Below are positions 9,574 to 23,857 of a stretch of 64,000 bases of DNA, piece after piece. Made by a program: the position numbers and the translations under genes. Location: the IMG/VR virus record IMGVR_UViG_3300028840_006257, positions 62,001 to 126,000 of that record. One strand, given 5' to 3'. Position 1 is the stretch's first letter. Each line of letters opens with the position of its first letter. The notes below the pieces were generated by a model, which was given only the letters and a program-made list of their open reading frames with translations, was not told the origin of the DNA and did no database searches.

Positions 9574-10080
9574 TTGCCGATTTTCCAGTATCAGTGCCCG
9601 AGCTGCGCCCTGCGGTTCGGATCCATGCAGCCTCGGGAGGGGGTGCGCGACTCCCTTCCCTGCAGGCGCTGCGGCAGACCTGCGACTCGGCAGCTCAGCG
9701 CGTCGAAGTTCAAGTTCGGCCACCGACCCGACGGGCCTCGCCCCCAGAACACGGGCGCGAGCTCGGTCGACCACGACGTGGACGTGATCATCGGCCGGAG
9801 CGCGAAGCAGAACCTCCGCGAGTTCCAGAAACGCCAGGACCACAAGCGTCGCGTGATCGCCGCCAACGGCACCGCGGGCGACAACCTCAGTCGGCTCGAC
9901 GACGGCGACTACTTCGTCATGACCGAGCAGCAGAGGATCGCGGCGAAGAAGGCGCGCCTCTACAACCAGGAGGCGATGAGACGGATCGTCGAGTACCGAA
10001 AGGAGCGACGCGCGTACGGCGGCCAGCCCGAACGCGTCCTCACCAGCGTCCACGAGATTCCCGACGAGGCTGCTTCCTGA
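9574..10080 (+). CDS. FmdB-like zinc-ribbon protein
   Basis: N-terminus MPIFQYQCPSC...LPCRRCG is the FmdB-type MP(I/L)YEYxCxxC...CPxCG signature. Confidence 0.75.
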   Translation: MPIFQYQCPSCALRFGSMQPREGVRDSLPCRRCGRPATRQLSASKFKFGHRPDGPRPQNTGASSVDHDVDVIIGRSAKQNLREFQKRQDHKRRVIAANGTAGDNLSRLDDGDYFVMTEQQRIAAKKARLYNQEAMRRIVEYRKERRAYGGQPERVLTSVHEIPDEAAS

Positions 10081-10516
10081 GGAAGCGGTCGCGAACCCCG
10101 GCCTCCCTCGGGAGGACCCAGACGAACAGACAGACGGATCAGATGGAGACGAATCCCGCCTAGCGGACGAGACAGACTCCCCTCCCTCGGGAGGCGGTCA
10201 GACGGAAACCGACGGAACGAATGCGGACCTGAACGCGATGTGAATGTCAGCCCGCGCTGAGCGGGCAAACCGCGACTGCAACCAGGGCCTCGAGCTCCAC
10301 AGGAGTTGTGCGCCCTGAAGGCTCGGAGAGGCTACCTCTCGTTGACTCTTTCCATTCAGACATCCCCTGCGACCTGGCAGGGCGCCGCTGATCGCGGCAT
10401 CGGACTCGTGATGGCTCGAGCCCGACGTTCGGTGACGAGCGGGCGAGCCGTCCGTACAGGTTCCACGTTCACCAGAGACAACCGGGTTCCGCAGGAGCCC
10501 GCAAGGGGTTGAAACC
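10081..10516 (+). ncRNA. Candidate structured non-coding RNA or long leader upstream of the sheath gene
   Basis: 436-nt gap in an otherwise tightly packed operon. Hairpins: CCTCCC-TC-GGGAGG twice (10102, 10181), GCCCGC/GCGGGC, GAGAGG/CCTCTC, CCCTGC/GCAGGG, GCCGC/GCGGC, and a multi-segment stem at 10413-10449. Confidence 0.45.
10119..10245 (+). repeat. Dispersed non-coding element, copy A
   Basis: Shares CAGACG...ACGAA...TAGC...CTCCCTCGGGAG[G/A]CGGTCAGA...GAATG...GAAC...ATGTGAAT with 22234..22352. Confidence 0.8.
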
Positions 10517-13500
10517 ATGGCAAATTTCCCTGGGACCATCTACGCGCCTCCTGGCGTCTACACCCGCACCAGGTTCCAGAGCCCCGTCTCTGGCGTCCTG
10601 GCGGGCGTTCGCATCCCCGTCTTCATCGGCACCGGCAACGAGCTGCTTCAGCAGCAGGACCTCGAGGTCATTCGTGGCTCTAGCAGCTCGGTCGATCAGC
10701 AGGTCCCGCAGGAGGACGAGACCGGTCGTGCCGTCGTGAGCATCTCCGATACGGGTCAGGTGACCCTCGGGGACTTCAACGGCGCGCGACAGCGCATCCA
10801 GGTCCGCAACTTCCCGATCACGAACGGAGACGGAAGCGGGACCACCGCCACGGACCCGAGTTCCATCCTCGTGACCATCAACGGCAGGCCCGACGTGGTC
10901 CTGAGCGTGGCTCGCGCCGACATCGGCGTCATCGAGATCAGCACGGCGCCCGACCTGAACGACGACGTGCGGGTGACGTACTTCTTCAAGCGGCACGACA
11001 CGCAGATGACGGACAACGTGTCGGACCAGGTGACTCCCGAGTCGGCCATCCTCGAGGGCGCCATCGGCAACCTCTTCGAGTTCACCTCGGACGACAACGT
11101 GTTCACCGTCACGGTGGACGACGACCAGAACCAGGTCGTGACGGCCACCTTCCCGACGGGGAGCGTCTCGGCCTCGACGGTCGTCTCGCTGATCAACGGC
11201 GCCGCGGCGGGAACGTCGCTCATCGCGTCGGAGTACACGAACAACTTCGGCCTCACGGCCGTTCGCCTCGTGGCGGACCGCAACCTCCTCATCGGGAGCG
11301 GTTCGGCCAACGTCGTCCTCGGCTTCACGCAGGGCCAGGCGACGAGCCGCAACAAGAACTTCGTGACGTTCAACGGTCCCATCGTGGACGGGACGAACGG
11401 GGGCATCACGACGACAGACACGTCCAAGGTCACGGTCCGCGTGAACGGGACCCAGGTCATCCCGACCGAGCTCGACGGACGCAACCGCACCGTGACGCTG
11501 CCCTTCGCGCCGGCCGCCGGCGATCTCGTCACGATTCAGTACTACTTCAACACGTGGCAGGACACCTTCGACTACCTGGCCAACATCAACGTGACGGAGG
11601 TCCTCCGCTGCGGGATCGTGCCGGGCAACAACGACTTCATCGAGCAGGCGGACTTCGTCCTGAAGGACGACCTGATCGTGTGGGGGAGCGCTTTCCTGGT
11701 GAGCGCCGGCGTGACGAGCGTCGGGGCCCCGGCCTTCGGGCCGACGCAGATCAGCGGCCTTCTGGTCGACAACCGCTGGTTCCTGTCCGAGACGACCGTC
11801 GTCGTGGACGACACGGTCTCCCCGCCAGTCGAGAACCGTCGGCAGTTCCAGCTCCCGGCCCAACCCACGACGGGCAACGGCCGCGACACACCGCTCGGCC
11901 AGAACGTCTTCCTGTCCATCTCCAACCGGCGGGTGGACCTGCCGACCAACAACCCGAACCTCGTCAAGGCCTACTGGGGTTGGAGCGTGCAGGACGCCCT
12001 CCAGCGCGGTCCCGTGACTGTGACCGAGGTCAAGGGGTCGATCATCACCCTCGAGGAGTCCGTTCCCGTCGGAGCGGGCGTCTGGGCGACCTTCTGGTAC
12101 AACATCCTCGTCGACGAGGAGTACACGGTCCAGGTCGAGACCTCGGGACCGTCCGGCATCGGCACCTACTTCCTCTTCGACGGCGACGGAAACCCCGTCT
12201 ACACGCCGACCTTCGGGAGCAAGGGCCCCGCCATGACCGGGGTGACGATTTCGTTCCCCTCGGGCTCCGAGCTCACCCCCGACGTGCACTTCGAGGGCGG
12301 CACGAGTGGTCCCGTCGAGGAGACGGTGACGGTCCAGTTCGCGGACAAGGACGCCACCATCGCGAAGTTCACGGTCGGCGGCAGCGGTCCCTACGCGTTC
12401 GTCTCGGGCGAGTCCGACAGGGCCCGGTTCATGATCGACAGCAGCGCCCTCGCGGGCGGCACGGCCGGGATCGACCTGTCCGCGCCGCACGGCATCCAGG
12501 GACTCGGTTTCAGCGCGAGCCTCCTCGGAGAGGAGATCCAGTACGACGAGGATACCGGCACCACGACCTACGACGTCCTCGCGGGCATCAACGACGACGT
12601 GTCGATGTCCGTGGACGGCGTGGTCATCTCGGTGACGGTCCCGGCCCAGACCGGCGTGAACGCGGACGCCTACGTCGAGGCCATCAACGCCGAGGCGAAG
12701 CTGTCCGCGAACTCTCCGTACCTCGACGGCACCACCCGGTTCCTCGGGACCACGGTCGTGACCGCGGGCGAGTACGACAAGCTCGTGTTCAACTACACGG
12801 GCGTCACCAACCCCGCGACGGGCCCGGTGACCGCCGTCATCGCCCCGGGAACGTACGCCTCCCCGGCCTTCATGGCCGCGGCGGTGGACACGGCCCTGAA
12901 CACGGCCATCGCGGCCCTGCCGGCGGGGTATGCGGGCCTCGACATCGCCGTGACTGCGAACGCCGACGGACAGATGCGGTTCACCTACAAGGCGGCCGAC
13001 ACCGACCTGGGCACCTCCGCGAGCGGGACCGTCACCGAGGTGGGAGCCATCGTGGGAGACACGATCACCATCGACACGGTGACCTTGACCGGGGCTCTGA
13101 CGCAGGTTTCGGGCGGTCTCGACTTCGACACCGGGCAGGCTCGGGCGACTCTCGTGCCGACCGGCGTGGAACCCGGCGACAACTTCACGATCAACGCGGG
13201 GGGTGGCCCGATCACCATCACCGCGTTGGGCGCCCAGACCCCGGGTGGCCTGAACTTCGATGAGGGGGACCAGGCGACGGGCACTATCACCGTCTCGGGA
13301 CCAATTCCGAACGACACCGTCACGATCAACGGGATCACGCTGACGGCGCTCGGAGCTCAGACCCCGGGTGGCCTGAACTTCGACGAGGGCACGCGAGCCA
13401 CCGGCACCGCCACGCTCACCGGGGTCCAGTACGGCGACACGATCTCCATCGACACCACCGCGGTCGGGGGAGGTCCCGTCACTCTGACGGCTAGCAACAC

Positions 13501-16500
13501 GCTGACCCCGGGCGGCCTTGACTTCAACGTCGGCACGGCGGCGACGGGAAGCATTCAGCTCGTGGGCGTGCGGCCCGCGACCATCGCGCCGTTCCCGGTG
13601 ACCGCGGCCGACACCGTCACCATCGGCGGGAACGTCCTGACGGCGAACGAGGGGCCGCGCACGCCGGGCGCCGACGACTTCGACGCCGGGACCAGGGCGC
13701 TCGGGAGCGTCACGGTCGTCGTGGACGCGCTCCCGGCGACGGGCGTCCTGTACGGCGACACGATCACCGTCGGGGGCATCGCCCTCGTCGCGGACAACGT
13801 CACGACTCCGGGTGGCCTGAACTTCGACGCGGGCACCCAGGCGTTCGAGGTGCTGACCGTGCTCCTGGCTCCGGGCGTCCCGACGCCTCCCGCGGTCATC
13901 ACTATCGACGTGGGCGGCGCGGCGGGCGGACCGTTCCCGCTCATCCCGGCGGGCGGTCCGCGCACCCCGGGCGCGAACGACTACGACGAGACGCTCGGGA
14001 CCACGATGGCGATAGCGGCCGACATCGCGGCGGCGATCAACGATCCGCTCAACGTGTTCTCCGCGTTCATGAGCGCGGCCGTCGGGCCCGGTCCTTCGGA
14101 CGTGACGTTCACGTGGAACGTGCCCGGCGTGGTCGCCAACGGCATCGTGAACCTGACGGCCGATCCGATGCTCTCTCCGCTCGTCGGCTTCGCCGGCGGC
14201 GTTGGCACGGAGGTCACGACCGCGACGGCCCTCGTCACGGCGCTCAGCGATCCGCTGAACGGGCTCACGGGCCTCATCCAGGCGCACAACACCGGCGGCG
14301 TTTCCAACGTCGTGAACCTGCAGGCCCTCACCCCGGGCCTCGCGGGCAACTCGATCAGCCTCGTCTCCACGGCGCCGGCGCGGCTCGTGCCGTCGGCGGC
14401 GACCATGGCGGGCGGCGTAGGCGACGACCTCACGGCCGCAACCGACGTGCAGGCGGCGGTGAACGACGTCGCCAACTCGTTCGCCACGGCGGTGACGGCC
14501 CTCACGACCGGAGACACGGCGGCCCTCACGGCGGTCACGCCCGGAGCCGTGGGCAACCTCATCACGCTGACCACGACGGCGGCCGGGAGGTTCGTGCTGT
14601 CCGCCGGGACGCTCACGGGAGGGGTCGGCGACGACATCTCGGCGGCGACGAGCCTGGTCGCGGCAATCTCCGACGCGGGCAACGGACTCGTCGGCGGCGT
14701 CGTCGCGGACAACGCCTCGGGCACGACCAACGTCGTCACCATCGACTCGTACACGCCGGGACTGGTCGGTAACGGCGTCCTCCTGGCGGAGTCCACGGCC
14801 GGAGCTCGGATCGCGCTCTCGGGCGCCACGCTGCTCGGCGGCGTCGGCGACAACACGACGGTCGCGGCCTCCATCGCGGCGGCCATCAACGACGTCGGAA
14901 ACGGCATCGTGACCTCCGTGACGGCCCTCGCGGCCCTGGCCGTCGTCACGATGACGGCGGTGACGCCGGGCAACGCCGGAAATTTGATCGGTACCACGTC
15001 GTCAGACGCGACGCGCCTGCTCATGTCGGGCCTGACCCTCGCCGGGGGCTCGGGAACCGACCTCAGCGTCGCCACGAGCATCGTCGCGGCGATCAACGAC
15101 CCGGGCAACGGGCTCGCCGTGGACGTGATGGCCGACAACGCCAGCGGAACCTCGACCACGGTCACCGTGTGGGACCTGACTCCGGGCGTGCTCGGCAACA
15201 CGAACACCATCGCCTCGTCCACGGGCACGCGGCTCCCGGTCTCGGGCGCCAACTTCACGGGCGGCGACACGGTGGTGGGCGTGGGTTCGAACATCGTCAC
15301 CGCGATCAACGACGCGGCCAACGGCCTGAACGGAATCGTGACGGCCGACAACAGCGGGGGCACCTCGGCGGTCGTGGATGTCACGGCGGCCGTGCCGGGC
15401 CCGCAGGGGAACTTCATCGTGCTCGCCTCGAGCGACGCGGGGCGCCTCCCGGTCTCCGGCGCGACCCTCACGGGAGGTGCCGGCCTCGGCGGCGGCGTGT
15501 TCGAGTTCCTCGACGCGGCGACGGTCGCGGAGGACTTCGCGATTCTCGCGGGCCTCTCCACGGACGCGCTGCCCAGCCAGGAGCAGACCAAGGTCGTCGA
15601 CGGAGATCTCGTGCGCCGGTTCACGGCGTCGGGCAGCTCCGGGCGCCTGATCTACGACCGGCTCGTCGTCCGCAACCGCGTCGTGCCCGGCAGCGGGTCG
15701 CTCGCGGCCGAGTCTCAGGTCGACCAGACCCAGCTCGTCATCGAGGGCACGAACGCCGAGGACGAGACGGGCCTCCAGCCGAGGGCATTCGGATCGGCGG
15801 GGATCGAGGCGACGATCCGGTCCGCCTCCTTGTACGGGGAGGTGGGCTTCAAGGACGGTCAGGTGGCGTCGGGGACGTACGGGGACTCGCGCGACGGACA
15901 GCCCGCGGTGATGTTCTACGCCCAGGGTGGCATCAATCCCCAGAACAACGTGTTCAAGTTCAACATCGACGGGACGCCCGTGACGGTGGTGTTCACGGAC
16001 GGCGTCGGGGCCGCGATTCCCGCGGCCGGGAGCGCCAGCGTGCCTCTCGGTCCGGTCACGACGGCGAACACGGTCCTCGCCCAGATCCTCGCCGGGGCGG
16101 TCGGCGCCGGACTGCCAGCCTCGGTCGTGCTCCAGGAGGGCGCGGGCACCCGACTGCTGAGCGCCACCGCCACCACGGACTCCGCCGTCACGATAGGTGC
16201 CGGGAACGCGAACGACGTCCTCGGCTTCTCCGACGACGCCACGGCGGCCCGGACCCTGGTCGAGCCCGAGGTCACGGCCTCCGCGCTCATGATGCACCAC
16301 AGCGCGTCCCTCAACGACGCGCTCCTGGACTACCAGAACCCCGACGCGACGTACTTCGCAGAGCAGGCCCTCGCGGGCGTCGAGACCGACTCGAGCAACG
16401 CGCAGTTCCTCTTCATCGAGTCGCAGGCCAACAACATCGTGGGCCTCGGGGCCTCGTCCAACATTACGTTCCTCACCGCCACGAGTGACTCGTGGCTGCG

Positions 16501-17965
16501 CACGGGGACGGGAGTCGGCGTGGCGACGGGCGAGGGGGCCGCGGGCGAGAGCGGATTCCAGGGCTACTACGTCACGAGCTCGGACCCGGTCGACGGCTCG
16601 GGTTCCGCCAACACGTCGTCCCTCAACAACGGCACGGGCCAGGACGGCATCATCGGCACGACGTACCGCGACGCGGTGACGGGCCTCACCTTCACCGTCC
16701 TCGAGCGCGAGGGGGGCTCCGCCTACCCGACGGGCGCGGGGGCCTGGTTCACCTTCGAGGTGCGCAAGCTCGTCACCACGGACGCGAACATCCCGGTCAA
16801 CTCCATCCCGGGCCTCGAGATGACGGTCGCGAATACCGAGGGATCCACGATCCCGCAGGGAGACACGGCCATCGTCGAGACGTTCGACCGGGGCGGCCAG
16901 GAACCCGCGGTGGGGGACTCCTACTTCGTGACCTACAACTTCTCGAAGACGGAGGCCGACTTCGAGACGATGCTGTTCACGAATCAGCGGGCCGTGGAGG
17001 CGAACTACGGGGAGGTCAACCCGGACAACCCGGTGTCCCTCGCCGCCTACCTCGGCTTCCTGAACGGCGGGGTCGTCCTCGCCATCAAGCAGGTGCCGAA
17101 GATCCCGGGTTCGAACCAGGCGAGCACCCAGAGCTACCTCGACGCGCTCGACGACCTCAGGGGACCGCTGCCGGGAGGCGCCACGCTGGACACGATCACG
17201 CCGCTCAAGGGCGACGACGAGGACCTGTTCCTCTCCCTGTCGAACCACTGCGACATCCAGTCGAGCATCCGGTACCGCTCCGAGCGGACCGGGCTGATCG
17301 GGGTCTCGTCGGGGACGCAGCCGACGGACGTCGGCGGCATCGCGCAGCAGATCGCGAACACGCGCATCAGGCTCGTGTACCCGGACATCGTGACCCTCAC
17401 GATCCAGGACGCCCTCGGGAACGACAAGCAGTTCCTCGTGGACGGGACCTTCCTCGCGGCGGCGCTCTCGGGCAACCGAGCCGCCCCGAGGATCGACGTG
17501 GCGACCCCGTGGACGAGGGCCCGCATCGTCGGCTTCGACGAGCTCGCCCGTACCCTCGACGCGGTCGAGCAGAACCAGGTGGCCGTACAGGGCGTCACCG
17601 TCCTGGACCAGCGCGGCACGATCATCCGAGTCCGTCAGGGCCTCACGACGGACATGAGCAACATCCTCACCAAGCTCCCGACGGTCATCACCATCGCGGA
17701 CGAGGTGCAGCGCTCCGCTCGCAGGGATCTCGACAGGTTCATCGGGGTCAAGTTCCTGCCGGGCATCCTCTCGGAGATCGAGGGCCAGCTCGCGACCACC
17801 ATGAAGGCGCTCAAGAACGCCGAGATCATCGCGGCGTTCACGGGCATCCAGGCGCGGACCACCAACGACCCGACGCTGGTGGAGATCGAAGCATTTTATC
17901 AGCCGATTTTCCCGCTTTTATACATCGTTATAACCTTCAACCTTCGCAGCAACCTTGGAGGTTGA
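10517..17965 (+). CDS. Contractile tail sheath protein, greatly enlarged (2482 aa)
   Basis: N-terminal APPGVYTRT; C-terminal sheath core (VLAIKQVP...RTGLIG...RIRLVYP...VRQGLTTD...IADEVQRSARRDLDRFIG...EIEAFYQPIFPLLYIVITFNL). Tube gene lies downstream. Confidence 0.92.
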   Translation: MANFPGTIYAPPGVYTRTRFQSPVSGVLAGVRIPVFIGTGNELLQQQDLEVIRGSSSSVDQQVPQEDETGRAVVSISDTGQVTLGDFNGARQRIQVRNFPITNGDGSGTTATDPSSILVTINGRPDVVLSVARADIGVIEISTAPDLNDDVRVTYFFKRHDTQMTDNVSDQVTPESAILEGAIGNLFEFTSDDNVFTVTVDDDQNQVVTATFPTGSVSASTVVSLINGAAAGTSLIASEYTNNFGLTAVRLVADRNLLIGSGSANVVLGFTQGQATSRNKNFVTFNGPIVDGTNGGITTTDTSKVTVRVNGTQVIPTELDGRNRTVTLPFAPAAGDLVTIQYYFNTWQDTFDYLANINVTEVLRCGIVPGNNDFIEQADFVLKDDLIVWGSAFLVSAGVTSVGAPAFGPTQISGLLVDNRWFLSETTVVVDDTVSPPVENRRQFQLPAQPTTGNGRDTPLGQNVFLSISNRRVDLPTNNPNLVKAYWGWSVQDALQRGPVTVTEVKGSIITLEESVPVGAGVWATFWYNILVDEEYTVQVETSGPSGIGTYFLFDGDGNPVYTPTFGSKGPAMTGVTISFPSGSELTPDVHFEGGTSGPVEETVTVQFADKDATIAKFTVGGSGPYAFVSGESDRARFMIDSSALAGGTAGIDLSAPHGIQGLGFSASLLGEEIQYDEDTGTTTYDVLAGINDDVSMSVDGVVISVTVPAQTGVNADAYVEAINAEAKLSANSPYLDGTTRFLGTTVVTAGEYDKLVFNYTGVTNPATGPVTAVIAPGTYASPAFMAAAVDTALNTAIAALPAGYAGLDIAVTANADGQMRFTYKAADTDLGTSASGTVTEVGAIVGDTITIDTVTLTGALTQVSGGLDFDTGQARATLVPTGVEPGDNFTINAGGGPITITALGAQTPGGLNFDEGDQATGTITVSGPIPNDTVTINGITLTALGAQTPGGLNFDEGTRATGTATLTGVQYGDTISIDTTAVGGGPVTLTASNTLTPGGLDFNVGTAATGSIQLVGVRPATIAPFPVTAADTVTIGGNVLTANEGPRTPGADDFDAGTRALGSVTVVVDALPATGVLYGDTITVGGIALVADNVTTPGGLNFDAGTQAFEVLTVLLAPGVPTPPAVITIDVGGAAGGPFPLIPAGGPRTPGANDYDETLGTTMAIAADIAAAINDPLNVFSAFMSAAVGPGPSDVTFTWNVPGVVANGIVNLTADPMLSPLVGFAGGVGTEVTTATALVTALSDPLNGLTGLIQAHNTGGVSNVVNLQALTPGLAGNSISLVSTAPARLVPSAATMAGGVGDDLTAATDVQAAVNDVANSFATAVTALTTGDTAALTAVTPGAVGNLITLTTTAAGRFVLSAGTLTGGVGDDISAATSLVAAISDAGNGLVGGVVADNASGTTNVVTIDSYTPGLVGNGVLLAESTAGARIALSGATLLGGVGDNTTVAASIAAAINDVGNGIVTSVTALAALAVVTMTAVTPGNAGNLIGTTSSDATRLLMSGLTLAGGSGTDLSVATSIVAAINDPGNGLAVDVMADNASGTSTTVTVWDLTPGVLGNTNTIASSTGTRLPVSGANFTGGDTVVGVGSNIVTAINDAANGLNGIVTADNSGGTSAVVDVTAAVPGPQGNFIVLASSDAGRLPVSGATLTGGAGLGGGVFEFLDAATVAEDFAILAGLSTDALPSQEQTKVVDGDLVRRFTASGSSGRLIYDRLVVRNRVVPGSGSLAAESQVDQTQLVIEGTNAEDETGLQPRAFGSAGIEATIRSASLYGEVGFKDGQVASGTYGDSRDGQPAVMFYAQGGINPQNNVFKFNIDGTPVTVVFTDGVGAAIPAAGSASVPLGPVTTANTVLAQILAGAVGAGLPASVVLQEGAGTRLLSATATTDSAVTIGAGNANDVLGFSDDATAARTLVEPEVTASALMMHHSASLNDALLDYQNPDATYFAEQALAGVETDSSNAQFLFIESQANNIVGLGASSNITFLTATSDSWLRTGTGVGVATGEGAAGESGFQGYYVTSSDPVDGSGSANTSSLNNGTGQDGIIGTTYRDAVTGLTFTVLEREGGSAYPTGAGAWFTFEVRKLVTTDANIPVNSIPGLEMTVANTEGSTIPQGDTAIVETFDRGGQEPAVGDSYFVTYNFSKTEADFETMLFTNQRAVEANYGEVNPDNPVSLAAYLGFLNGGVVLAIKQVPKIPGSNQASTQSYLDALDDLRGPLPGGATLDTITPLKGDDEDLFLSLSNHCDIQSSIRYRSERTGLIGVSSGTQPTDVGGIAQQIANTRIRLVYPDIVTLTIQDALGNDKQFLVDGTFLAAALSGNRAAPRIDVATPWTRARIVGFDELARTLDAVEQNQVAVQGVTVLDQRGTIIRVRQGLTTDMSNILTKLPTVITIADEVQRSARRDLDRFIGVKFLPGILSEIEGQLATTMKALKNAEIIAAFTGIQARTTNDPTLVEIEAFYQPIFPLLYIVITFNLRSNLGG
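13016..15483 (+). repeat. Seven N-half repeats (ending TPGGLNFDxG-like) followed by seven C-half repeats (AAIND...TPG..GN...TLxGG) within the sheath
   Basis: N-half loop motifs near 13105, 13238, 13361, 13505, 13661, 13805 and 13964. C-halves contain AINDPLN, ALSDPLN, AVNDVAN, AISDAGN, AINDVGN, AINDPGN and AINDAAN. Confidence 0.9.
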
Positions 17966-18008: not shown

Positions 18009-20606
18009 GTGACCCCTGAACAACTCGAACAGGTTCTTGCGGCGTTTGCGTCCGACGACGCGGCCGCCGTGATTGCGAAATGCACAGGTGTGCCACGGGG
18101 TCACGTCTACAAGCTCTGGAAAGAACAGTTCGGACCGCGAGCTCTTCGGGATCGGGGCAACCGACTTCGCGGCCTGGCGAAGAGTCGTTCGGGAAACTCG
18201 GCCAGAACTGAGGTTCGCGACGCCGCCATCGCTGCCTTCGAAGAGGGGGAGGCGATGAAGGCCGTCGCGCTCCGGTTGGGGGTTCACTACACGCAGATTC
18301 GTGAGTGGTGGGTTGAGGTTTACGGGGTGGAGACGGTGGCCGAGCGGGGCCGTGCCCTTCAGAGGACTCGAACTCGTGCTAACCATGAGAGGCTCAGGGG
18401 AAAAGCGCGAAAGGTCCGCGTTATCTCGGTACCTTGTGACGCGTGCGGTCGGGATCTTGAGGTTTCTACCATCTCGGCGGCTAAAAGTTCGCGAATCGTG
18501 TGTTCCTCCTGCGAGCAGTCGGAACGAGGGGCCGACACCGCGTGTCCCGTCTGTGGTCGACTCTGCGTCGGGAAAAGGGGACTCGCGAGCCACTTAGGGA
18601 GCGCCAAAGATGAGGTCCATCGCGAGTATCTTCGGCACCAGGAAGAAGAGCGTCTTGGAGAGGAGGGTCACGGGCACGTGGTGTGCCTTGAGTGCGGCCA
18701 TCGTGCTCGGAATCTGTGGAAGCATCTTGAGGCGGAACACGAGATGACACCCTCCGAGTATGTCGGAAAGTGGCCGGGTGCGTGCTGGCGTACCGAGGCG
18801 GCAGAACGAGCACGAGTGCGACGGTCCTCTGAGGCACGTTCGGCCAGCGGCTTTGGAAAGGGGACGCGGAAGATCGTGGCATGTCCCCAGTGTTCAACGG
18901 AGGTCGAGGTCTCTCGTTTTGCGGGGCCGCTTCACGATCTACGCTGTGACGAGTGCAGGGCAGAGGACGAACTGAAGACATGGTGTGGGAAGAGCGAACC
19001 CGAGGACTACGTCTCCTGTCGAGAGTGTGGATTTCGGGCAGAATTTCTCATCTCTCATGTCCGATCCGCACACGACCTTGCAGAGTACGTGACTCGTCAT
19101 CCGGATGCGCCGTTCACGGCGTGTCGGGCTGGTCAGCGGAAATCACCGAGTACGAAGCTCGTGCTAACGAAGGAGCAGCTGGTGCCCTTCATGGATGAGG
19201 GGCGCGTTGTCGCGGCCGCCGCGGCGAGGGCCTTCGGGTGCGCGCAGTTTCAAATTCGTCGGGCGTGCAACGAGCTGGGGCTGCAAACCCGACGGCGGCT
19301 CGCCTGGCAGAAAGCGGTCCTGGATCGTGCCGCGTCGTATCTGGGCGTCGGCTACAAGTCGGAGTGGACCGATTCAAGGATCGTCAACGAGGCAACCGGC
19401 CGGAAGCTTCACTACGATGGCTTCTTTCCTTCCCGGAACTTGATCATCGAGGCTCACGGGGACCAGCATTTCTTCTTCATCGAAGCGTGGCACCGCACCT
19501 ACGAGGAGTTCGAACGCCTGCGCGAGTTGGATCGCTTCAAGCTCAGGCGCGCTCAGGAGCTCGGGTTTGCCGTGAAGGTCGTCCGGTACGGGGACGCGAT
19601 TCACGAGAGAGGCTTCTGGAGACGGCTCCTGGAGGACGACCGGGCGCTGTGGGCCAACAAGTCGGAGAGCGAGCGCCGGGACGACGTGGAGAGGGTGCTG
19701 CGGGAACTGAGGGTCTCGGGATTCCCCGACATCCTTCCCTCCCCGAAGACACGCGCCGAATTCACGAAACTCCAGAGACAGACGATCTATCTGGACTCGT
19801 CGGGAACGATCCGTCCACAGACGACGCGAGGCACGACGGCGTGTGCCTCTTTTTTTCCGAACAGGTACCGGGCCCGTTACAAGGGGGCGCCGAGCGTGCT
19901 GGAGGCGTGGGACGACGACGACAGGTTGCGCAGGGCAGTTCGGGTACAGATGGAGGCGGGACATCCCACCACCCCTCACCGTGTGCTGCGGGCCCTCCAG
20001 ATGATCTGTCGAACGCCCTCCGTGTTTCGTCCCGGAGTCGCCAAATACGTCTGTCAGACCTACTGTCGCGAGGGGGGGACCGTCTGGGATCCGTGTGCCG
20101 GCTACGGGGGGCGTCTTTTCGGCGCGATGGCAACGCACGTGGGGGCCTACCTGGGCACGGACGTCGAGCCCGAGATCGTCGAGGGAAATCGGAGATTGGC
20201 GCAGGAGATCGGCGTCTCCGATCGATGTCAAGTGGTTCAGGCGGCGGCCGAAGAGTTCGATCCCGAGTCCCCCCTCGATTTGGTATTCACGTCTCCACCG
20301 TACTACGACCTTGAAAGCTACGGGTCGCGGTCCGATGCTCGGGCCTACTCCGACGTGGGCGAGTGGCTTGAGCGTTTCCTGGTGCCCGTGATCAACAAGG
20401 GCGCCGAGCATCTCAGGTCCGGCGCCTACTTGATCCTGAATCTTCCGGCCAAACCCCGCGCCGGCGTCGTCCTTGCCGACGAGGCCGTCAAGATCGCCGT
20501 ACGAGCTGGTCTCGGGGTTCAGCCCGTCGTTTTCATGCCCGTCAGGCGCCTTCGGACCTCTCGATCTGCATGGAAGGACCCGCTAGTCGTTTTTCGCAAG
20601 CCGTAG
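18009..20606 (+). CDS. Fusion: HTH and Zn-finger array, Vsr/DUF559-like PD-(D/E)xK endonuclease, and amino-DNA methyltransferase (SPPY)
   Basis: Repeated CxxC/C2H2 units (CPVCG...SHL, CLECG...KHLEAEH, CRECG...SHVRSAH). Nuclease motif LHYDGFF...IIEAHGDQHF (19407-19472). MTase motif I DPCAGYGG (20088) and motif IV FTSPPYY (20286-20306). Codon usage is more AT-rich than the flanks. Confidence 0.85.
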   Translation: MTPEQLEQVLAAFASDDAAAVIAKCTGVPRGHVYKLWKEQFGPRALRDRGNRLRGLAKSRSGNSARTEVRDAAIAAFEEGEAMKAVALRLGVHYTQIREWWVEVYGVETVAERGRALQRTRTRANHERLRGKARKVRVISVPCDACGRDLEVSTISAAKSSRIVCSSCEQSERGADTACPVCGRLCVGKRGLASHLGSAKDEVHREYLRHQEEERLGEEGHGHVVCLECGHRARNLWKHLEAEHEMTPSEYVGKWPGACWRTEAAERARVRRSSEARSASGFGKGTRKIVACPQCSTEVEVSRFAGPLHDLRCDECRAEDELKTWCGKSEPEDYVSCRECGFRAEFLISHVRSAHDLAEYVTRHPDAPFTACRAGQRKSPSTKLVLTKEQLVPFMDEGRVVAAAAARAFGCAQFQIRRACNELGLQTRRRLAWQKAVLDRAASYLGVGYKSEWTDSRIVNEATGRKLHYDGFFPSRNLIIEAHGDQHFFFIEAWHRTYEEFERLRELDRFKLRRAQELGFAVKVVRYGDAIHERGFWRRLLEDDRALWANKSESERRDDVERVLRELRVSGFPDILPSPKTRAEFTKLQRQTIYLDSSGTIRPQTTRGTTACASFFPNRYRARYKGAPSVLEAWDDDDRLRRAVRVQMEAGHPTTPHRVLRALQMICRTPSVFRPGVAKYVCQTYCREGGTVWDPCAGYGGRLFGAMATHVGAYLGTDVEPEIVEGNRRLAQEIGVSDRCQVVQAAAEEFDPESPLDLVFTSPPYYDLESYGSRSDARAYSDVGEWLERFLVPVINKGAEHLRSGAYLILNLPAKPRAGVVLADEAVKIAVRAGLGVQPVVFMPVRRLRTSRSAWKDPLVVFRKP

Positions 20607-20659
20607 ATCTCTCCGCTTTTCCCCCTATCGGGCCCCCTCGGCATCAGGAGGGCACTGTC

Positions 20660-21055
20660 ATGCGGGACGACCTGTACGCGGGCTGGCATCTGCTCTTCGA
20701 TGCCTTCGTAGACCCCGAGCACGCCGAGCGTCTGGACGACGCCGAGTTTCTTGAACGGTTATTCCGAGATCTCGTGGAAGTGCTCGACATGGAGATCCTC
20801 GGGGAACCGGCGTTCAAGAAGATTCCCTGCGATCCCTCCAGGCTGGACACGGAGCATGACGAGGGCGGCGTGACGGGTACCGTCATCGTCACCACGAGCC
20901 ACCTGAGCATCCACACGTGGCCCCTGCGGAAACGCTTCTGCCTCGACGTGTTCTCGTGCAAGCAGTTCGATCACCTCGCGGTCGAGAGGCTCGTGAGGGC
21001 ACGCCTCCGCGTCGAGAGGCGGTCGAGTCGCTGGATCCCACGGACGTGGCCGTGA
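20660..21055 (+). CDS. speD: S-adenosylmethionine decarboxylase proenzyme family (class 1B)
   Basis: GWHLLFD...GGVTGTVIVTTSHLSIHTWP...LDVFSC; RBS AGGAGG before ATG 20660; 131 aa. Confidence 0.85.
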   Translation: MRDDLYAGWHLLFDAFVDPEHAERLDDAEFLERLFRDLVEVLDMEILGEPAFKKIPCDPSRLDTEHDEGGVTGTVIVTTSHLSIHTWPLRKRFCLDVFSCKQFDHLAVERLVRARLRVERRSSRWIPRTWP

Positions 21056-21258
21056 GCGATTTTCACGAACGGCTCTCCGAATTCATGAACGTGTCGCCGA
21101 CCGAGCTCGCGCGTCGGCTCAGAAGAGAGGATGACCCCGAGAAGCGCCGAGCGATGCGCCGGGCCCTCGAGGCATGGCGGCTGACGGAGGGGAATCCCCT
21201 GACCCGGAGTGCCTCGCGCGTCGCCCGCACGTGGCTGGCTTCGTTTCTACGTTTATAG
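21052..21258 (+). CDS. Small basic hypothetical protein (68 aa) ending SASRVARTWLASF
   Basis: GTGA overlap with the speD stop; alternative ATG at 21085. Confidence 0.55.
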   Translation: MSDFHERLSEFMNVSPTELARRLRREDDPEKRRAMRRALEAWRLTEGNPLTRSASRVARTWLASFLRL

Positions 21259-21333: not shown

Positions 21334-22125
21334 ATGGCTAACAAAGACCTCGCCCCCGCGAACGGCGTACAGGGCTCGAGCTACATCTACGACTTCGGAA
21401 CGTCCCCGCAGACGCGAACGGCGGTGAGTCAGAAGGTCCGTCTCCTGACGCCGGCCTACGGCTCGGATGCGAACCTCCTGTTCCAGATGGGGGTCCTGAG
21501 CTCCTTCACGCCGAACGAGACGCGCACGATCGACACCCTGCGCGGGATCGGCTTCGGCGACATGATCGCCGAGCTCGTGCCGTCGGTGACGGAGGCGATG
21601 ACGGCCGGCTTCGAGCGGGCACTCCTGTACCTCTCGAACCTCTGGCAGGCCACGGGCTACGCGGGGGGCGCCTCGGGCCCCGTCAGGAGCCTGCGGCACC
21701 ATCGCTGGCCCTTCGACATCGAGCAGCAGCTCGTGTTCTCGACCCTCGCCGACTACGACCTCACGGGTCAGGCGGGCGTCGGGTTCAACGGGGGCGGCGG
21801 CACCTTCGACGGGGGCGTGAAGGAGATCGTCTACCCGCAGGTCACCAACGATCCCAACAACTTCCCCGGCGACCTCCGGGGTCACACGGCGATCATCACG
21901 CTCTACGAGACCTGCTGGTTCAACTCCTGGTCCCTCACGAACGTGAGCCGCGACACGGGGATGCTGATGGAGACCGGGGACGTGACCATCAGCGACGTCC
22001 ACGACTTCAGCTCCGAGTACGGAGAGTTCCTCGCCACCGGCAACGACCCGACCATCGGTCAGGTCGGGTCCGTCCGGTTCAACGTGGGCGATCAGCGGAC
22101 CGCCTCCGACTTCATCACGACGTAA
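21334..22125 (+). CDS. Tail tube protein
   Basis: 263 aa, downstream of the sheath, RBS GAGGAAGG. Pattern QMGVLSSFTPNETRTIDTLRGIG...PFDIEQQ...TLYETCWFNSWS matches gp19-type tube strands. Confidence 0.8.
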   Translation: MANKDLAPANGVQGSSYIYDFGTSPQTRTAVSQKVRLLTPAYGSDANLLFQMGVLSSFTPNETRTIDTLRGIGFGDMIAELVPSVTEAMTAGFERALLYLSNLWQATGYAGGASGPVRSLRHHRWPFDIEQQLVFSTLADYDLTGQAGVGFNGGGGTFDGGVKEIVYPQVTNDPNNFPGDLRGHTAIITLYETCWFNSWSLTNVSRDTGMLMETGDVTISDVHDFSSEYGEFLATGNDPTIGQVGSVRFNVGDQRTASDFITT

Positions 22126-22233
22126 CCCTGAGACTTCGCGGGTAGGGTGAGGGAAAGCGCCCTTCCCGCACGGTGCCTCTCGGCCCCAGGGTTGGGAGGT
22201 CTTAGTGCTAACCGAGCAATCGGTGGAGCGTCG

Positions 22234-22352
22234 CAGACGCAAACGTGAATGTGAAACACATGGGAACGAACAGATCCCTCGAGCTGTAGCCTCCTCCTCT
22301 CCCTCGGGAGACGGTCAGATGTGGACGAGAATGGGATCGAACCAATGTGAAT
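22234..22352 (+). repeat. Dispersed non-coding element, copy B
   Basis: TCTCCC-TC-GGGAGA-CGGTCAGA (22298-22319), plus GAATGGGATCGAAC and ATGTGAAT, collinear with copy A. Confidence 0.8.
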
Positions 22353-22408
22353 CTCTTGCGCTGTGAAAACGACCCACCGGCTTGCTCCACGACAGAGTGG
22401 AGAGAGTC

Positions 22409-23857
22409 ATGGTCACTTTAAAAGCCCTTGAGGCCGCGATCGTTCAGGTCGAGCGCATCCGCGATTTCGAGTATTCGTTCGAAGCCAATGACGTCGAGAT
22501 CACGCTGAGACCTCTGCGTCCCGACGAAGAGACCGAGGTCCAGCGATATGCCCAGATCGCGATGGAGGACTTGGAGGAGGGTGAGGCGACTCAGGCGGCC
22601 TTCGCTGACTTCATGGATAGGATGCGGCATGCTTCGTTGGCGTTCGCCATCGTGCAGATTGGGGACCTGGATCTTCGGGACGTCGAGTACGTCGAGACTG
22701 GCGAGCAGGACGAACAGGGCAGGCCCGTCTCGGTGCCGAAGTGGGAGGGTCTCCGGAACATGATCGGGCAGGAGTGGACGCGCTCAATGCTCAGTCAAGT
22801 GTTCGCGCGATTCGGAGAACTTCTCGAACGAGTGGAGCTGAGAGCGTCCAAAAGCGTGAAATTCGACGCCGTCGACCTGGACGAGGAGATCGCTCGTGTG
22901 GAACGGCGGCTCGCCGAGCTCCGCGCCGCGAAGCAGACTCTTGAGGCATCTCCTGAGGAGGACAACGTACGCAAACAGCAGCGTCTCCTGACGGAGATTC
23001 AGAGGACTCGGCAGCAGCAACATGACAACATCCGCGGCGGCACGGCGACGGGGGACGTCGAGGAGTCCGCGAGCGCGTCGGAGCCCTCAGGAGAGAAAGT
23101 CGAGGCGTCGAAACCCGCACCGAGCGACGGTTCGGCAGTCGAACCCCGGCCCTCCTCGGCTGAGACGACCTCTCGACCCGTGGGAGAGCGGCCCTCGGCT
23201 TTCCCCGATGCCGGGCCTCCGCCTGAAGTCGATCGGCCGGACGCTTCTGAGGGGCCTCTCGGCGGCGCCGAGACGCAGGACCAGGAAGGTTCCGAATCCC
23301 CGTCGAAGCGTACCGAAGCCGTCGATTCACAGAACATTCCACTTCCACATGGAGGAGACTCCTTCTTTGATCCCACTGACCCAGATGAGGCCATGGAGAT
23401 CGAGGCCCATCGTCAGGAGATGCTGCATCGGCAGCACATCCTCCGACAACGCGAACGTAGGCTGGAGGAACAGAGACGCGAGGCTTTGGGGATGCCGAGT
23501 GCGGCTGAGGCGGCTCGAAAGGCGCAAGAGGCCCAGAGACAGGCGCAGGTCCCGCAGAAGGCAGCTCGGCTCGATCCTCGCACGAGCTCCCTGAGAGAGG
23601 CCGCCAACGTCTCCGATGCCGTCTTCGACGCAGGCACCGGCAGCATTCAGTCGGCGCGCCCCCCAACTCCTCGATCGCAGAGATCCGGTAAGGGGACGAC
23701 GGCCACCTTACACGGCAAGCCCGTCTACAAGATGCCCCCACAGACTCTTGAGAGGAAGGAGGCCACCGGAACGCCGGATCAAGGCGAACCCATGGTGCCG
23801 ATCAACCCGCCTCCGGGATCGAGGAACGAGCGATTCAGAGGTCCTGGCGAACGGTAG
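22409..23857 (+). CDS. Tail assembly chaperone-like protein with long low-complexity C-terminal region
   Basis: Lies between the tube and tape measure genes. Acidic folded N-terminal ~170 aa (ITLRPLR...SLAFAIVQIG) then a Pro/Ser/Glu-rich tail. ATG 22409 after GGAGAG. Confidence 0.6.
   Translation: MVTLKALEAAIVQVERIRDFEYSFEANDVEITLRPLRPDEETEVQRYAQIAMEDLEEGEATQAAFADFMDRMRHASLAFAIVQIGDLDLRDVEYVETGEQDEQGRPVSVPKWEGLRNMIGQEWTRSMLSQVFARFGELLERVELRASKSVKFDAVDLDEEIARVERRLAELRAAKQTLEASPEEDNVRKQQRLLTEIQRTRQQQHDNIRGGTATGDVEESASASEPSGEKVEASKPAPSDGSAVEPRPSSAETTSRPVGERPSAFPDAGPPPEVDRPDASEGPLGGAETQDQEGSESPSKRTEAVDSQNIPLPHGGDSFFDPTDPDEAMEIEAHRQEMLHRQHILRQRERRLEEQRREALGMPSAAEAARKAQEAQRQAQVPQKAARLDPRTSSLREAANVSDAVFDAGTGSIQSARPPTPRSQRSGKGTTATLHGKPVYKMPPQTLERKEATGTPDQGEPMVPINPPPGSRNERFRGPGER

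What the first reader, a model, noticed from the sequence alone, without database searches (positions are those of the whole stretch)
22126..22408. Second copy of the non-coding element between the tail tube and chaperone genes
Seen: the only other large intergenic gap in the tail block (283 nt) holds the homologous element (CAGACG, ACGAACAGA, TAGC, TCTCCCTCGGGAGA-CGGTCAGA, GAATGGGATCGAAC, ATGTGAAT). It also sits where codon usage shifts to a more AT-rich style. Inference: both copies flank the sheath-to-tube segment. They could set transcript stoichiometry (high-copy sheath and tube versus low-copy tape measure) or act as recombination points for module exchange.
Basis: partly seen in the sequence, partly recalled or inferred. 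Interest (0 to 1): 0.6.

Follow-up and report, generated by a model that had tools for sequence, protein, structure and literature searches.

The report
Conserved regulatory leader after tail-tube gene
The 283-base gap after the tail-tube gene of this huge phage holds a terminator-like hairpin, a promoter and a long folded mRNA leader that shares a stem-loop module with the leader of the tail-sheath gene, so it most likely tunes tail-gene expression rather than marking a recombination point.

Summary
Gap B (22126-22408) and gap A (10081-10516) share a colinear stretch of about 70 nt. Their local alignment scores 47, against 19.7±2.4 in 1000 shuffles. Both elements sit at the same places in dozens of related huge-phage contigs. 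The flanking genes are homologs of the sheath and a virion protein of myophage Tunturi 5.

B has four parts:
- Two hairpins closing the tube gene. The second is a canonical terminator in relatives but has a decayed U-run here.
- A GGTAnnnT -10 box, present in 39 of 51 relatives. The same box drives leaderless genes elsewhere in this genome. It predicts a start near 22155.
- A leader of about 250 nt built from tandem modules (stem-loop, YGGYCARAY, purine-rich spacer, UGUGAA box). One module is the paralog of those in A.
- A conserved helix covering the ribosome-binding site and start codon of the next, chaperone-like gene.

It matches no Rfam family. My best reading is a cis-acting RNA leader that sets the output of downstream tail genes. 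The shared module is probably an operator for a common factor. The stoichiometry idea is plausible but untested, because no RNA data exist. The recombination idea is not supported: homology runs straight through B. I file it as a new RNA motif of a known kind.

The parts
21334..22125 (+). 263-aa probable tail-tube gene; its stop codon bounds element B
   Evidence: It is 38% identical to Tunturi 5 gp329, annotated as a virion structural protein and placed downstream of the sheath gene. 286 viral contigs encode relatives. The Atlas gives a lead to Phi812_tail_tube. There is no Pfam or PHROG hit, and the AF2 model was poor at pLDDT 37.
22138..22169 (+). Hairpin H1. Its 5' arm contains the -10 box.
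   Evidence: Read from the sequence. RNAalifold pairs are supported in 11 relatives. L009, L012 and L014 keep the stem with different sequences.
22140..22148 (+). GGGTAGGGT: an extended -10-type promoter box (hexamer 22143-22148). The predicted transcription start is about 22155.
   Evidence: GGTAnnnT lies 3-80 nt after the tube stop codon in 39 of 51 non-redundant relatives. In this genome TANNNT sits 6-7 nt before start codons and almost never at other spacings, which is the leaderless arrangement. No -35 box was found by the consensus scan. The start site is inferred, not mapped.
22175..22200 (+). Hairpin H2, terminator-like. It is the first stem-loop of the leader.
   Evidence: An 11-bp stem appears in the MFE fold. 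In 10 of 11 close relatives the stem covaries and is followed by a run of T. It is flagged as terminator-like in L005. In the window the tail is TCTTAGTG and the scan does not flag it.
22212..22240 (+). Hairpins Ha (CCGA-GCAA-TCGG, 22212-22223) and Hb (GCGTC-GCA-GACGC, 22228-22240), which open the second module.
   Evidence: Both are nearly invariant in close relatives, with variable loops in Hb. Both appear in the MFE or centroid fold.
22290..22366 (+). The module shared with A. It runs: pyrimidine tract; stem-loop TCTCC-CTCG-GGAGA (22298-22311); box CGGTCAGAT (22312-22320); purine-rich spacer; ATGTGAAT (22345-22352); CTTGCGCTGTGA (22355-22366).
   Evidence: It aligns to A at 10177-10250. Stems differ but stay paired across 26 B-type and A-type copies, for example TCCCG/CGGGA, ACCTTC/GAAGGT, ACCTG/CAGGT and ACCCCTGC/GCGGGGGT. 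nhmmer and the covariance model detect it in relatives.
22371..22414 (+). Helix that covers the Shine-Dalgarno sequence (GGAGAG, 22399-22404) and the start codon. Its core is CTCCAC 22385-22390 paired with GTGGAG 22397-22402.
   Evidence: Seen in the RNAalifold consensus and the MFE fold. An equivalent hairpin is predicted in all 28 non-redundant long-leader relatives, with different arm sequences. On the model-fitted alignment 93% of cells pair, against 32-50% when partners are slid.
22409..23857 (+). 482-aa downstream gene. Its N-terminal ~160 aa are conserved; it is possibly a tail assembly chaperone.
   Evidence: tblastn matches residues 1-158 in most relatives. The Atlas gives weak leads to tail assembly chaperone clusters, score 0.88-0.89. 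There is no Pfam or PHROG hit.
10081..10516 (+). Element A, the leader of the sheath gene. Its modules are at 10102-10124 (stem-loop + ACCCAGACG) and 10181-10203 (stem-loop + CGGTCAGAC), with ATGTGAAT at 10238-10245. About 200 extra nt (10300-10516) are absent from relatives.
   Evidence: The element is conserved upstream of the sheath gene in relatives.
10517..17965 (+). 2482-aa tail-sheath homolog
   Evidence: Residues 9-654 and 2041-2477 match Tunturi 5 gp326, annotated as tail sheath, at 29-32% identity. The middle part holds internal repeats.

Best explanation
Element B is the junction between two tail transcription units of a huge contractile-tailed phage, and it works at the RNA level in cis.

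Transcripts coming from the tube gene meet two stem-loops, H1 and H2. H2 is a classical hairpin-plus-U terminator in relatives and is weakened in this genome.

A host-type -10 promoter nested in H1 starts a new transcript near 22155. That transcript carries a leader of about 250 nt. The leader is built from tandem modules: a short C-rich/G-rich stem-loop, the box YGGYCARAY, a purine-rich spacer and a UGUGAA box. It ends in a helix that buries the ribosome-binding site and start codon of the chaperone-like gene.

Together these features keep the genes after the tube gene at a lower, controllable level than sheath and tube.

The module shared with the sheath-gene leader (A) is most likely a common operator. 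It could be a binding site for one trans-acting factor, or a shared stability or processing determinant, that couples the two tail mRNAs.

Shown here: homology, conservation, the hairpins, the promoter-type box and the occluding helix. Inferred: the start site, attenuation, translational gating and the existence of a factor.
For: - A and B are homologous beyond chance.
- Both are syntenically conserved in many relatives across 43-68% GC.
- The strict module pattern occurs exactly twice, and zero times in the control, in a 618-kb 92%-complete relative.
- Stems change sequence while staying paired, and loops vary from 3 to 11 nt.
- On the model-fitted alignment 87.7% of cells pair, against 32-50% when partners are slid. 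13 pairs carry double changes, and 0 of 500 shuffles reach the observed values.
- The sense strand folds better than the antisense strand in 20 of 28 leaders. The window leader has z = -1.9.
- The -10 box is conserved in 39 of 51 relatives, and the same box is used at leaderless gene starts.
- H2 is terminator-like in relatives.
- An SD/AUG helix is predicted in 28 of 28 long-leader relatives.
- GC3 drops from 0.94 to about 0.70 across B, consistent with lower expression downstream.
- There is no conserved ORF in the gap.
Against: - There are no expression data of any kind. No RNA run holds the sequence.
- The window's own H2 lacks a U-run, and no terminator or -35/-10 promoter is called by the consensus scan.
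- The folding energy of the start region (-21.6 kcal/mol) is ordinary for this GC-rich genome. It ranks 30th of 155 gene starts.
- Within the distant group alone, covariation of the SD helix does not exceed shuffles: 62-75 of 500 shuffles reach the observed value.
- The strongest counts come from an alignment fitted to the structure, which also includes a few doubtful rows.
- Element A has no equivalent SD-covering helix, so the shared module and the translational gate are separable.
- No candidate binding factor was identified.
- L009 and L012 lack the -10 box.
Confidence: 0.6

Rival explanations
1. The modules are nut/put-like processive antitermination signals. A stem-loop plus a conserved linear box in the nascent RNA would load a factor onto RNA polymerase, or act on it directly. 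The polymerase could then transcribe the 7.4-kb sheath gene and the >40-kb run of giant tail genes without premature termination.
For: - The form is a structure-conserved hairpin followed by a sequence-conserved single-stranded box, in tandem.
- There are two sites per genome, at the heads of two long co-directional gene runs containing ORFs of 2482, 1803 and 3673 aa.
- They lie promoter-proximal in B.
Against: - The box is unlike boxA as I know it (from memory, not tested).
- In B the terminator-like H2 lies upstream of two of the three modules.
- No NusG-like gene was found in the 213-kb fragment, but the record is only about 40% complete.
- There is no match to any Rfam family.
Confidence: 0.15
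2. The shared sequence acts as DNA: a binding site for a phage activator or repressor that defines late tail promoters. The inverted repeat would be the protein's dyad site.
For: - Late operons of P2/Mu-type myophages start before the sheath gene and share activator sites (general knowledge).
- The element has dyad symmetry and sits at the heads of two tail gene blocks.
Against: - Arms change sequence while staying complementary. The spacer between arms varies from 3 to 11 nt, which suits RNA hairpins and not a dimeric DNA site.
- G-U pairs occur in stems, and the sense strand folds better.
- No -10 box follows the module at promoter distance. The conserved -10 box in B lies about 150 nt upstream of it.
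Confidence: 0.08
3. The modules encode short upstream ORFs. The G-rich arm would serve as a ribosome-binding site for an AUG 6-9 nt later. Translation of a 2-16-codon leader peptide, ending in the UGA of the UGUGAA or GCGCUGUGA boxes, would open or close the downstream helix.
For: - An ATG follows the stem at 6-9 nt in about 15 of 24 B-type and 6 of 9 A-type copies.
- In the window, L005, L007 and L008 a 15-codon ORF ends at the conserved TGA, about 45 nt before the main start (and reading).
Against: - About 40% of copies have ACG, ATT, ACC, ATA or ACA at that place.
- The distance from the ATG to the TGA is 48, 49 or 50 nt in close relatives, so the frame is not kept.
- Peptide sequences are not conserved.
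- Purine-rich sequence full of ATG and TGA gives such ORFs by chance.
Confidence: 0.1
4. The two copies are recombination points that let the sheath-to-tube cassette be exchanged between phages, or are remnants of a mobile insertion.
For: - An endonuclease-like ORF is inserted between A and the sheath gene in L088, L090 and L091, and the window has about 200 extra nt there.
- GC3 changes across B.
Against: - Homology to relatives is continuous across B. It breaks about 500 nt further on, inside the next gene.
- The variable genes lie between sheath and tube.
- The copies are direct, about 70 nt long and diverged.
- Both elements are vertically conserved along with their flanks.
Confidence: 0.04

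Closest known systems
Lambda nutL/nutR and the rrn leader antiterminators (boxB hairpin plus boxA)
   Same: A hairpin whose structure, not sequence, is conserved lies next to a sequence-conserved single-stranded box. It is present in two copies per genome at the heads of long transcription units.
   Different: The box sequence (YGGYCARAY) is unrelated. The modules are tandem and followed by purine-rich spacers. No N-, Q- or NusG-like gene was found, though the genome fragment is incomplete. No function has been tested.
HK022 putL/putR RNAs
   Same: Paralogous cis-acting RNA elements made of stem-loops, in two copies in a phage genome just downstream of promoters.
   Different: No sequence or Rfam-level similarity. 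The stems here are much shorter (4-8 bp). Direct action on polymerase is untested.
Start-associated sequences (SAS/ESAS) of Cluster K mycobacteriophages (PMC3203893)
   Same: Phage-specific repeated motifs containing SD-like GGAG sit upstream of gene starts in one orientation. Their function is unknown and is thought to concern translation or a bound factor.
   Different: SAS is a 13-bp motif 3-7 bp before the start codon, in 11-19 copies, at non-structural genes. ESAS inverted repeats do not covary, according to the paper. Here there are 2-3 loci, 35-230 nt upstream, at tail genes, with stems that do covary.
SD-sequestering leaders (riboswitch expression platforms, RNA thermometers, phage translational operators such as T4 gene 32/regA targets)
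   Same: A conserved helix pairs the ribosome-binding site and start codon behind a long structured leader.
   Different: No ligand, temperature dependence or repressor is known. No convincing alternative (anti-sequestor) pairing is conserved across the family. The helix stability is ordinary for this genome.
Intercistronic terminator/promoter junctions after major structural genes of phages (for example lambda pR'-tR')
   Same: A hairpin (plus a U-run in relatives) directly after a high-copy structural gene is combined with a promoter for the following genes. A promoter is followed shortly by a terminator-like hairpin.
   Different: Here the -10 box is nested in or just before the hairpin. 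In short-leader relatives the predicted start falls inside the stem. The leader is unusually long for a genome that otherwise uses many leaderless starts.

Membership tests
Any Rfam 15 RNA family | Score at or above the family's gathering threshold | tested here: not met
   There were no matches in the whole window at gathering thresholds. Only chance-level hits (E 0.7-10, 13-18 bits) appeared in 22000-22500.
Intrinsic (Rho-independent) terminator (H2) | G+C-rich stem-loop directly downstream of a gene | tested here: met
   An 11-bp stem at 22175-22200. It is conserved, with covarying arms, in 11 relatives.
Intrinsic (Rho-independent) terminator (H2) | Run of U immediately after the stem | tested here: not met
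   The window has TCTTAGTG and the scan does not call it. 10 of 11 close relatives have TTTT(T), and L005 is called terminator-like.
Sigma-70/sigma-A type promoter, -10-only (leaderless-type) class | TANNNT hexamer, conserved in position among relatives | tested here: met
   TAGGGT at 22143-22148, preceded by GGG. GGTAnnnT is present in 39 of 51 non-redundant relatives.
Sigma-70/sigma-A type promoter, -10-only (leaderless-type) class | The same motif is used as a promoter elsewhere in the genome | tested here: met
   The spacing of TANNNT to ORF start codons peaks sharply at 6-7 nt: 10 cases, against 3 at all other spacings from 3 to 12 (examples).
Sigma-70/sigma-A type promoter, -10-only (leaderless-type) class | -35 hexamer at 16-18 nt, or a mapped transcription start | tested here: not met
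   No -35/-10 pair was found by the consensus scan. Start mapping is not possible because there are no RNA runs.
nut / rrn boxB-boxA antitermination site | Hairpin adjacent to a conserved linear box in the leader RNA | tested here: met
   Stem-loop plus YGGYCARAY in 33 copies.
nut / rrn boxB-boxA antitermination site | boxA-type consensus and a cognate factor (N, NusB/E, NusG paralog) | tested here: inconclusive
   The box differs from boxA as I know it (from memory). There is no PF02357 (NusG) match in G000, but the record is about 40% complete. Binding is not testable here.
SAS/ESAS of Cluster K mycobacteriophages | 13-bp motif 3-7 bp upstream of start codons, 11-19 copies per genome | tested here: not met
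   The modules lie 35-230 nt upstream. There are three loci in 213 kb and two in a 618-kb relative. The definition is from PMC3203893.
Riboswitch-like leader with SD sequestration | Helix pairing the SD and start codon, conserved among relatives | tested here: met
.
Riboswitch-like leader with SD sequestration | Conserved mutually exclusive pairing (anti-sequestor) and a ligand | tested here: inconclusive
   TCGGTGG (22220-22226) can pair with CCACCGG (22374-22380) in the window; the fully complementary CCACCGA stands there in its close relatives. In distant relatives the GGTGG pairs locally instead (reading). A ligand is not testable.
Leader peptide / uORF | Start codon, reading frame and peptide conserved | tested here: not met
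   An ATG is present in only about 60% of copies. The ATG-to-TGA distance is 48, 49 or 50 nt in close relatives, and the peptides differ.

The most novel reading that the evidence does not exclude
The tandem 'stem-loop + YGGYCARAY' modules are recognition sites of a dedicated, still unidentified phage system that marks the two big tail mRNAs of a clade of huge phages. The system could be a processive antiterminator or an RNA-binding translational regulator. It would be a nut- or operator-like control layer specific to giant-gene tail operons.
Probability: 0.2. Interest if true: 0.7.

Novelty: new member of a known kind. Interest (0 to 1): 0.48.

Why it matters
Almost nothing is known about how huge phages control their late genes. 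Their structural proteins here match no Pfam or PHROG family. This element gives a concrete, conserved and testable handle. It consists of a promoter type shared with leaderless genes, a terminator/promoter junction after the tube gene, and a paralogous RNA module placed before the sheath gene and after the tube gene. If the module binds a factor, it would reveal how sheath, tube and low-copy tail-assembly genes are balanced in genomes with 7-11-kb ORFs. It also adds a candidate family to the catalogue of structured phage RNAs.

Tried and rejected
- **Rfam.** A scan of the whole window and a permissive scan of the gap gave nothing. There are no tRNA or tmRNA genes.
- **Expression.** The only holders of this sequence are DNA metagenome runs from sediment and seawater.
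- **Protein identity of the flanks.** Pfam and PHROGs gave no hits for the tube-like, sheath-like and downstream proteins. A PDB sequence and profile search gave nothing. The AlphaFold model of the 263-aa protein was unusable at pLDDT 37, so no fold search was run.
- **Small protein gene in the gap.** The 53-aa GTG ORF at 22205-22366 is not conserved in relatives.
- **More copies.** nhmmer, a hairpin-plus-box scan and the covariance model found only three loci in 213 kb. Look-alikes at G000 137198 and 95204 lie inside coding regions and are taken as chance.
- **Looser pattern in other large relatives.** It matched no more often than its control.
- **'Exceptionally strong' SD occlusion.** Rejected: the energy is ordinary for this genome.
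- **Covariation of the SD helix within the distant group alone.** Not significant against shuffles.
- **MAFFT alignments of the short hairpins.** They were not structurally consistent, so RNAalifold on them found little.
- **Three-strand switch.** An upstream GTGGAG competing with the SD for CTCCAC does not hold in distant relatives.
- **Tunturi 5.** The only cultured relative lacks the modules.

Full report
**Setting.** The window is bases 62001-126000 of a single 213,010-bp virus record with 65% G+C. CheckV rates the record about 40% complete. Nearly all large ORFs are on the + strand.

The 263-aa ORF ending at 22125 has relatives on 286 viral contigs, from 4 kb to 619 kb long. Among deposited phages it matches a 485-kb uncultured phage. 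It also matches gp329, a 'virion structural protein' of the jumbo myophage Tunturi 5, at 38% identity.

The 2482-aa ORF at 10517-17965 matches the Tunturi 5 'tail sheath' gp326 at both ends, with about 1400 extra residues in the middle. The 419-aa ORF before it matches the 'tail terminator'. Tunturi 5 has a contractile tail (PMC11924767).

The Atlas feature search gives weak leads to a tail-tube family for the 263-aa protein and to tail assembly chaperones for the N-terminus of the next protein. Pfam, PHROGs, PDB sequence searches and an AlphaFold model gave nothing usable.

**The observation.** The gap is exactly 22126-22408, 283 nt. The 'first copy' is the 436-nt gap at 10081-10516 before the sheath gene.

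- blastn finds a 26-nt core at 92% identity, with E about 1e-4 in the genome.
- The best local alignment spans about 70 nt and scores 47. In 1000 dinucleotide shuffles the mean is 19.7±2.4 and the maximum 33. The best of 285 other window chunks scores 32.
- A covariance model built only from B-type sequences hits A with E = 0.007.
- GC3 falls from 0.94 in the tube gene to 0.71, 0.70 and 0.76 in the next three genes.

There are three corrections. The 278-nt gap before the tube gene is mostly a probable 68-aa ORF. A third, short copy of the module lies at G000 43840-43887, 25-50 nt before a DUF5659 gene. Only the module is shared between A and B, not the whole gaps.

**Conservation.** The tube gene and the next gene are adjacent in nearly all relatives. 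The spacer between them is 210-290 nt in one large set and 45-130 nt in another.

In eleven close relatives the spacer is conserved about as well as the flanking coding DNA. Indels are not multiples of three, and there is no conserved ORF. Element A is likewise conserved upstream of the sheath gene.

In a 618-kb, 92%-complete relative the strict pattern GGRGAYGGYYARAY occurs exactly twice, at the A and B positions on the gene strand. The reversed control pattern gives no matches. Tunturi 5 itself has short spacers without modules, so the element belongs to a subclade.

**Anatomy of B, from 5' to 3'.**

1. *Hairpin H1 (22138-22169).* L009, L012 and L014 keep it with different sequences.

2. *The box GGGTAGGGT (22140-22148), inside the 5' arm of H1.* GGTAnnnT is found shortly after the tube stop codon in 39 of 51 non-redundant relatives. 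These span 43-68% G+C and include those with 45-nt spacers.
   - In this genome the same box lies just upstream of many start codons.
   - The TANNNT-to-start spacing is 6 nt seven times and 7 nt three times. It falls at any other spacing from 3 to 12 only three times.
   - That is the signature of leaderless transcripts. It identifies the box as a working -10 element and puts the start 7 nt after it, near 22155. This is an inference, since no -35 box is found.
   - In short-spacer relatives a strong hairpin begins 1-2 nt after the hexamer, so the predicted start falls inside its 5' arm. Read-through transcripts could form the full hairpin, but transcripts from the promoter could not.

3. *Hairpin H2 (22175-22200, 11 bp).* Its arms covary among relatives (CTCCTC/GAGGAG, CCTTCC/GGAAGG, TTCCTC/GAGGAA, CCCCC/GGGGG). 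In 10 of 11 it is followed by TTTT(T), and L005 is flagged terminator-like. In the window the tail is TCTTAGTG and nothing is flagged.

4. *Hairpins Ha and Hb (22212-22240)*, followed by a purine-rich stretch that ends in TCGAGCTGT.

5. *The module shared with A.* It consists of a pyrimidine tract, stem-loop 22298-22311, CGGTCAGAT, a purine-rich spacer, ATGTGAAT and CTTGCGCTGTGA.
   - Across 26 B-type and A-type copies the stem keeps pairing with changed sequences, and the loop is 3-11 nt long.
   - H2 and Ha are also followed by (Y)GG. In mid-distance relatives H2 is followed by ATGGTTSAT, so the leader reads as three tandem modules. A holds two.

6. *A helix from 22371 to 22414 that pairs the SD and the AUG.* An equivalent hairpin is predicted in all 28 non-redundant long-leader relatives. 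The arm pairs include CTCCAC/GTGGAG, GCTTCC/GGAAGC, GTTTCCC/GGGAAAC, GCTCCC/GGGAGC and CTGTTCCC/GGGAGCAG.

**How strong is the structural evidence?**

In favour:
- On the model-fitted alignment 87.7% of cells pair, against 32-50% for slid partners. 13 pairs show double changes, and no shuffle reaches the observed values.
- The sense strand folds better than the antisense strand in 20 of 28 leaders.
- The window leader has z = -1.9.

Against:
- That alignment is fitted to the structure and contains a few doubtful rows.
- Within the distant group alone the SD helix is 81% paired, against 35-60% when slid, but its covariation does not beat shuffles.
- The folding energy of the start region is ordinary for this GC-rich genome.

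I therefore treat the hairpins as well supported. Their regulatory strength remains unproven.

**What it most likely does.** The element joins three things: the end of a high-copy gene, a promoter, and a long structured leader ending in an occluded ribosome-binding site. This occurs in a genome that otherwise favours tight spacing and leaderless starts.

The simplest reading is post-transcriptional and attenuating control of the genes after the tube gene. The module shared with the sheath leader would serve as a common operator or stability determinant.

It could not be tested, because no RNA run holds this sequence, and read laying was therefore not used.

The rival readings are:
- *nut/put-like antitermination.* This is attractive because both copies head long runs of giant genes.
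- *A DNA-level activator site.* This is disfavoured by covarying arms, variable loop length and G-U pairs.
- *Short upstream ORFs.* An ATG follows the stem in about 60% of copies, but frame and peptide are not conserved.

**Recombination.** DNA similarity to six close relatives runs unbroken from before the tube gene, through B, to about 22,900. It breaks there, after the conserved N-terminal ~160 residues of the 482-aa protein.

The genes that come and go lie between sheath and tube. They are the 865-aa zinc-finger/HNH/methyltransferase ORF and the AdoMet-decarboxylase-like ORF.

The only insertion activity next to an element is downstream of A. L088, L090 and L091 carry an endonuclease-like ORF there, and the window carries about 200 extra nt. 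B is therefore not a module boundary.

**Comparison with known systems.** No Rfam family matches. In form the modules recall boxB-boxA sites and put RNAs. In genomic behaviour they recall the SAS/ESAS repeats of Cluster K mycobacteriophages (PMC3203893). The last helix recalls SD-sequestering leaders.

The element fails or cannot be tested on the defining features of each of these (see the membership table). I file it as a new motif within the known kind 'cis-regulatory phage mRNA leader at a terminator/promoter junction'.

**Verdict.** This is a real, conserved, paralogous non-coding element. Its function is inferred, not shown. It is moderately interesting and worth an experiment in a tractable relative.

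Noticed in passing
whole G000; e.g. G000 577-594, 16099-16115, 163304-163320, 204030-204046; window 1370 region (G000 63370): Many genes appear leaderless. A GGTAnnnT(G) box ends 6-7 nt before the ATG/GTG, and the spacing distribution peaks sharply there. This hints at a host with frequent leaderless translation, for example an actinobacterium-like host.
   Followed up: partly
window 10517-17965: The sheath homolog is 2482 aa, about twice the size of Tunturi 5 gp326. It has a ~1400-aa insert that carries 207-426-nt tandem-like repeats at about 13.2-15.5 kb.
   Followed up: partly
window 18009-21055: Two accessory-looking genes sit between sheath and tube. One is an 865-aa ORF with a Ros/MucR zinc finger, HTH, HNH-like and methyltransferase signatures (GC3 0.71). 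The other is an AdoMet-decarboxylase-like ORF. Relative L002 lacks the 865-aa ORF.
   Followed up: partly
window 21053-21258: A probable 68-aa ORF (GTG start overlapping the preceding stop) fills most of the 278-nt 'gap' before the tube gene. It looks like a small helix-turn-helix-type protein. This was not tested.
   Followed up: no
window ~22,900 (inside ORF 22409-23857): The mosaic joint lies here. Only the first ~160 residues of the 482-aa protein are conserved among relatives, and DNA similarity stops at this point.
   Followed up: partly
L088/L090/L091 1663-2493; window 10300-10516: A 276-aa endonuclease-like ORF is inserted between element A and the sheath gene in three relatives. The window has about 200 unrelated extra nt at the same spot.
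   Followed up: partly
G000 43803-43890 (L104 4203-4290): This is the third, single-module copy: a terminator-like hairpin, then a stem-loop plus ACGGCCAAAC, then the SD and ATG of a 91-aa DUF5659 protein.
   Followed up: partly
window 22247-22252, 22345-22350, 10238-10243: ATGTGA (a start codon directly followed by a stop codon) recurs inside the UGUGAA boxes of both elements. Whether these minimal ORFs are used is unknown.
   Followed up: no
window 9574-10080: The gene just upstream of element A encodes a 168-aa Zn-ribbon (FmdB-like, PF09723, below the cut-off) protein. It is conserved next to A in relatives and could be a candidate regulator. This is pure speculation.
   Followed up: no
window 6724-7779: A PAPS-reductase/DndC-like gene (phrog_424, E = 1e-54) lies upstream of the tail block.
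   Followed up: no
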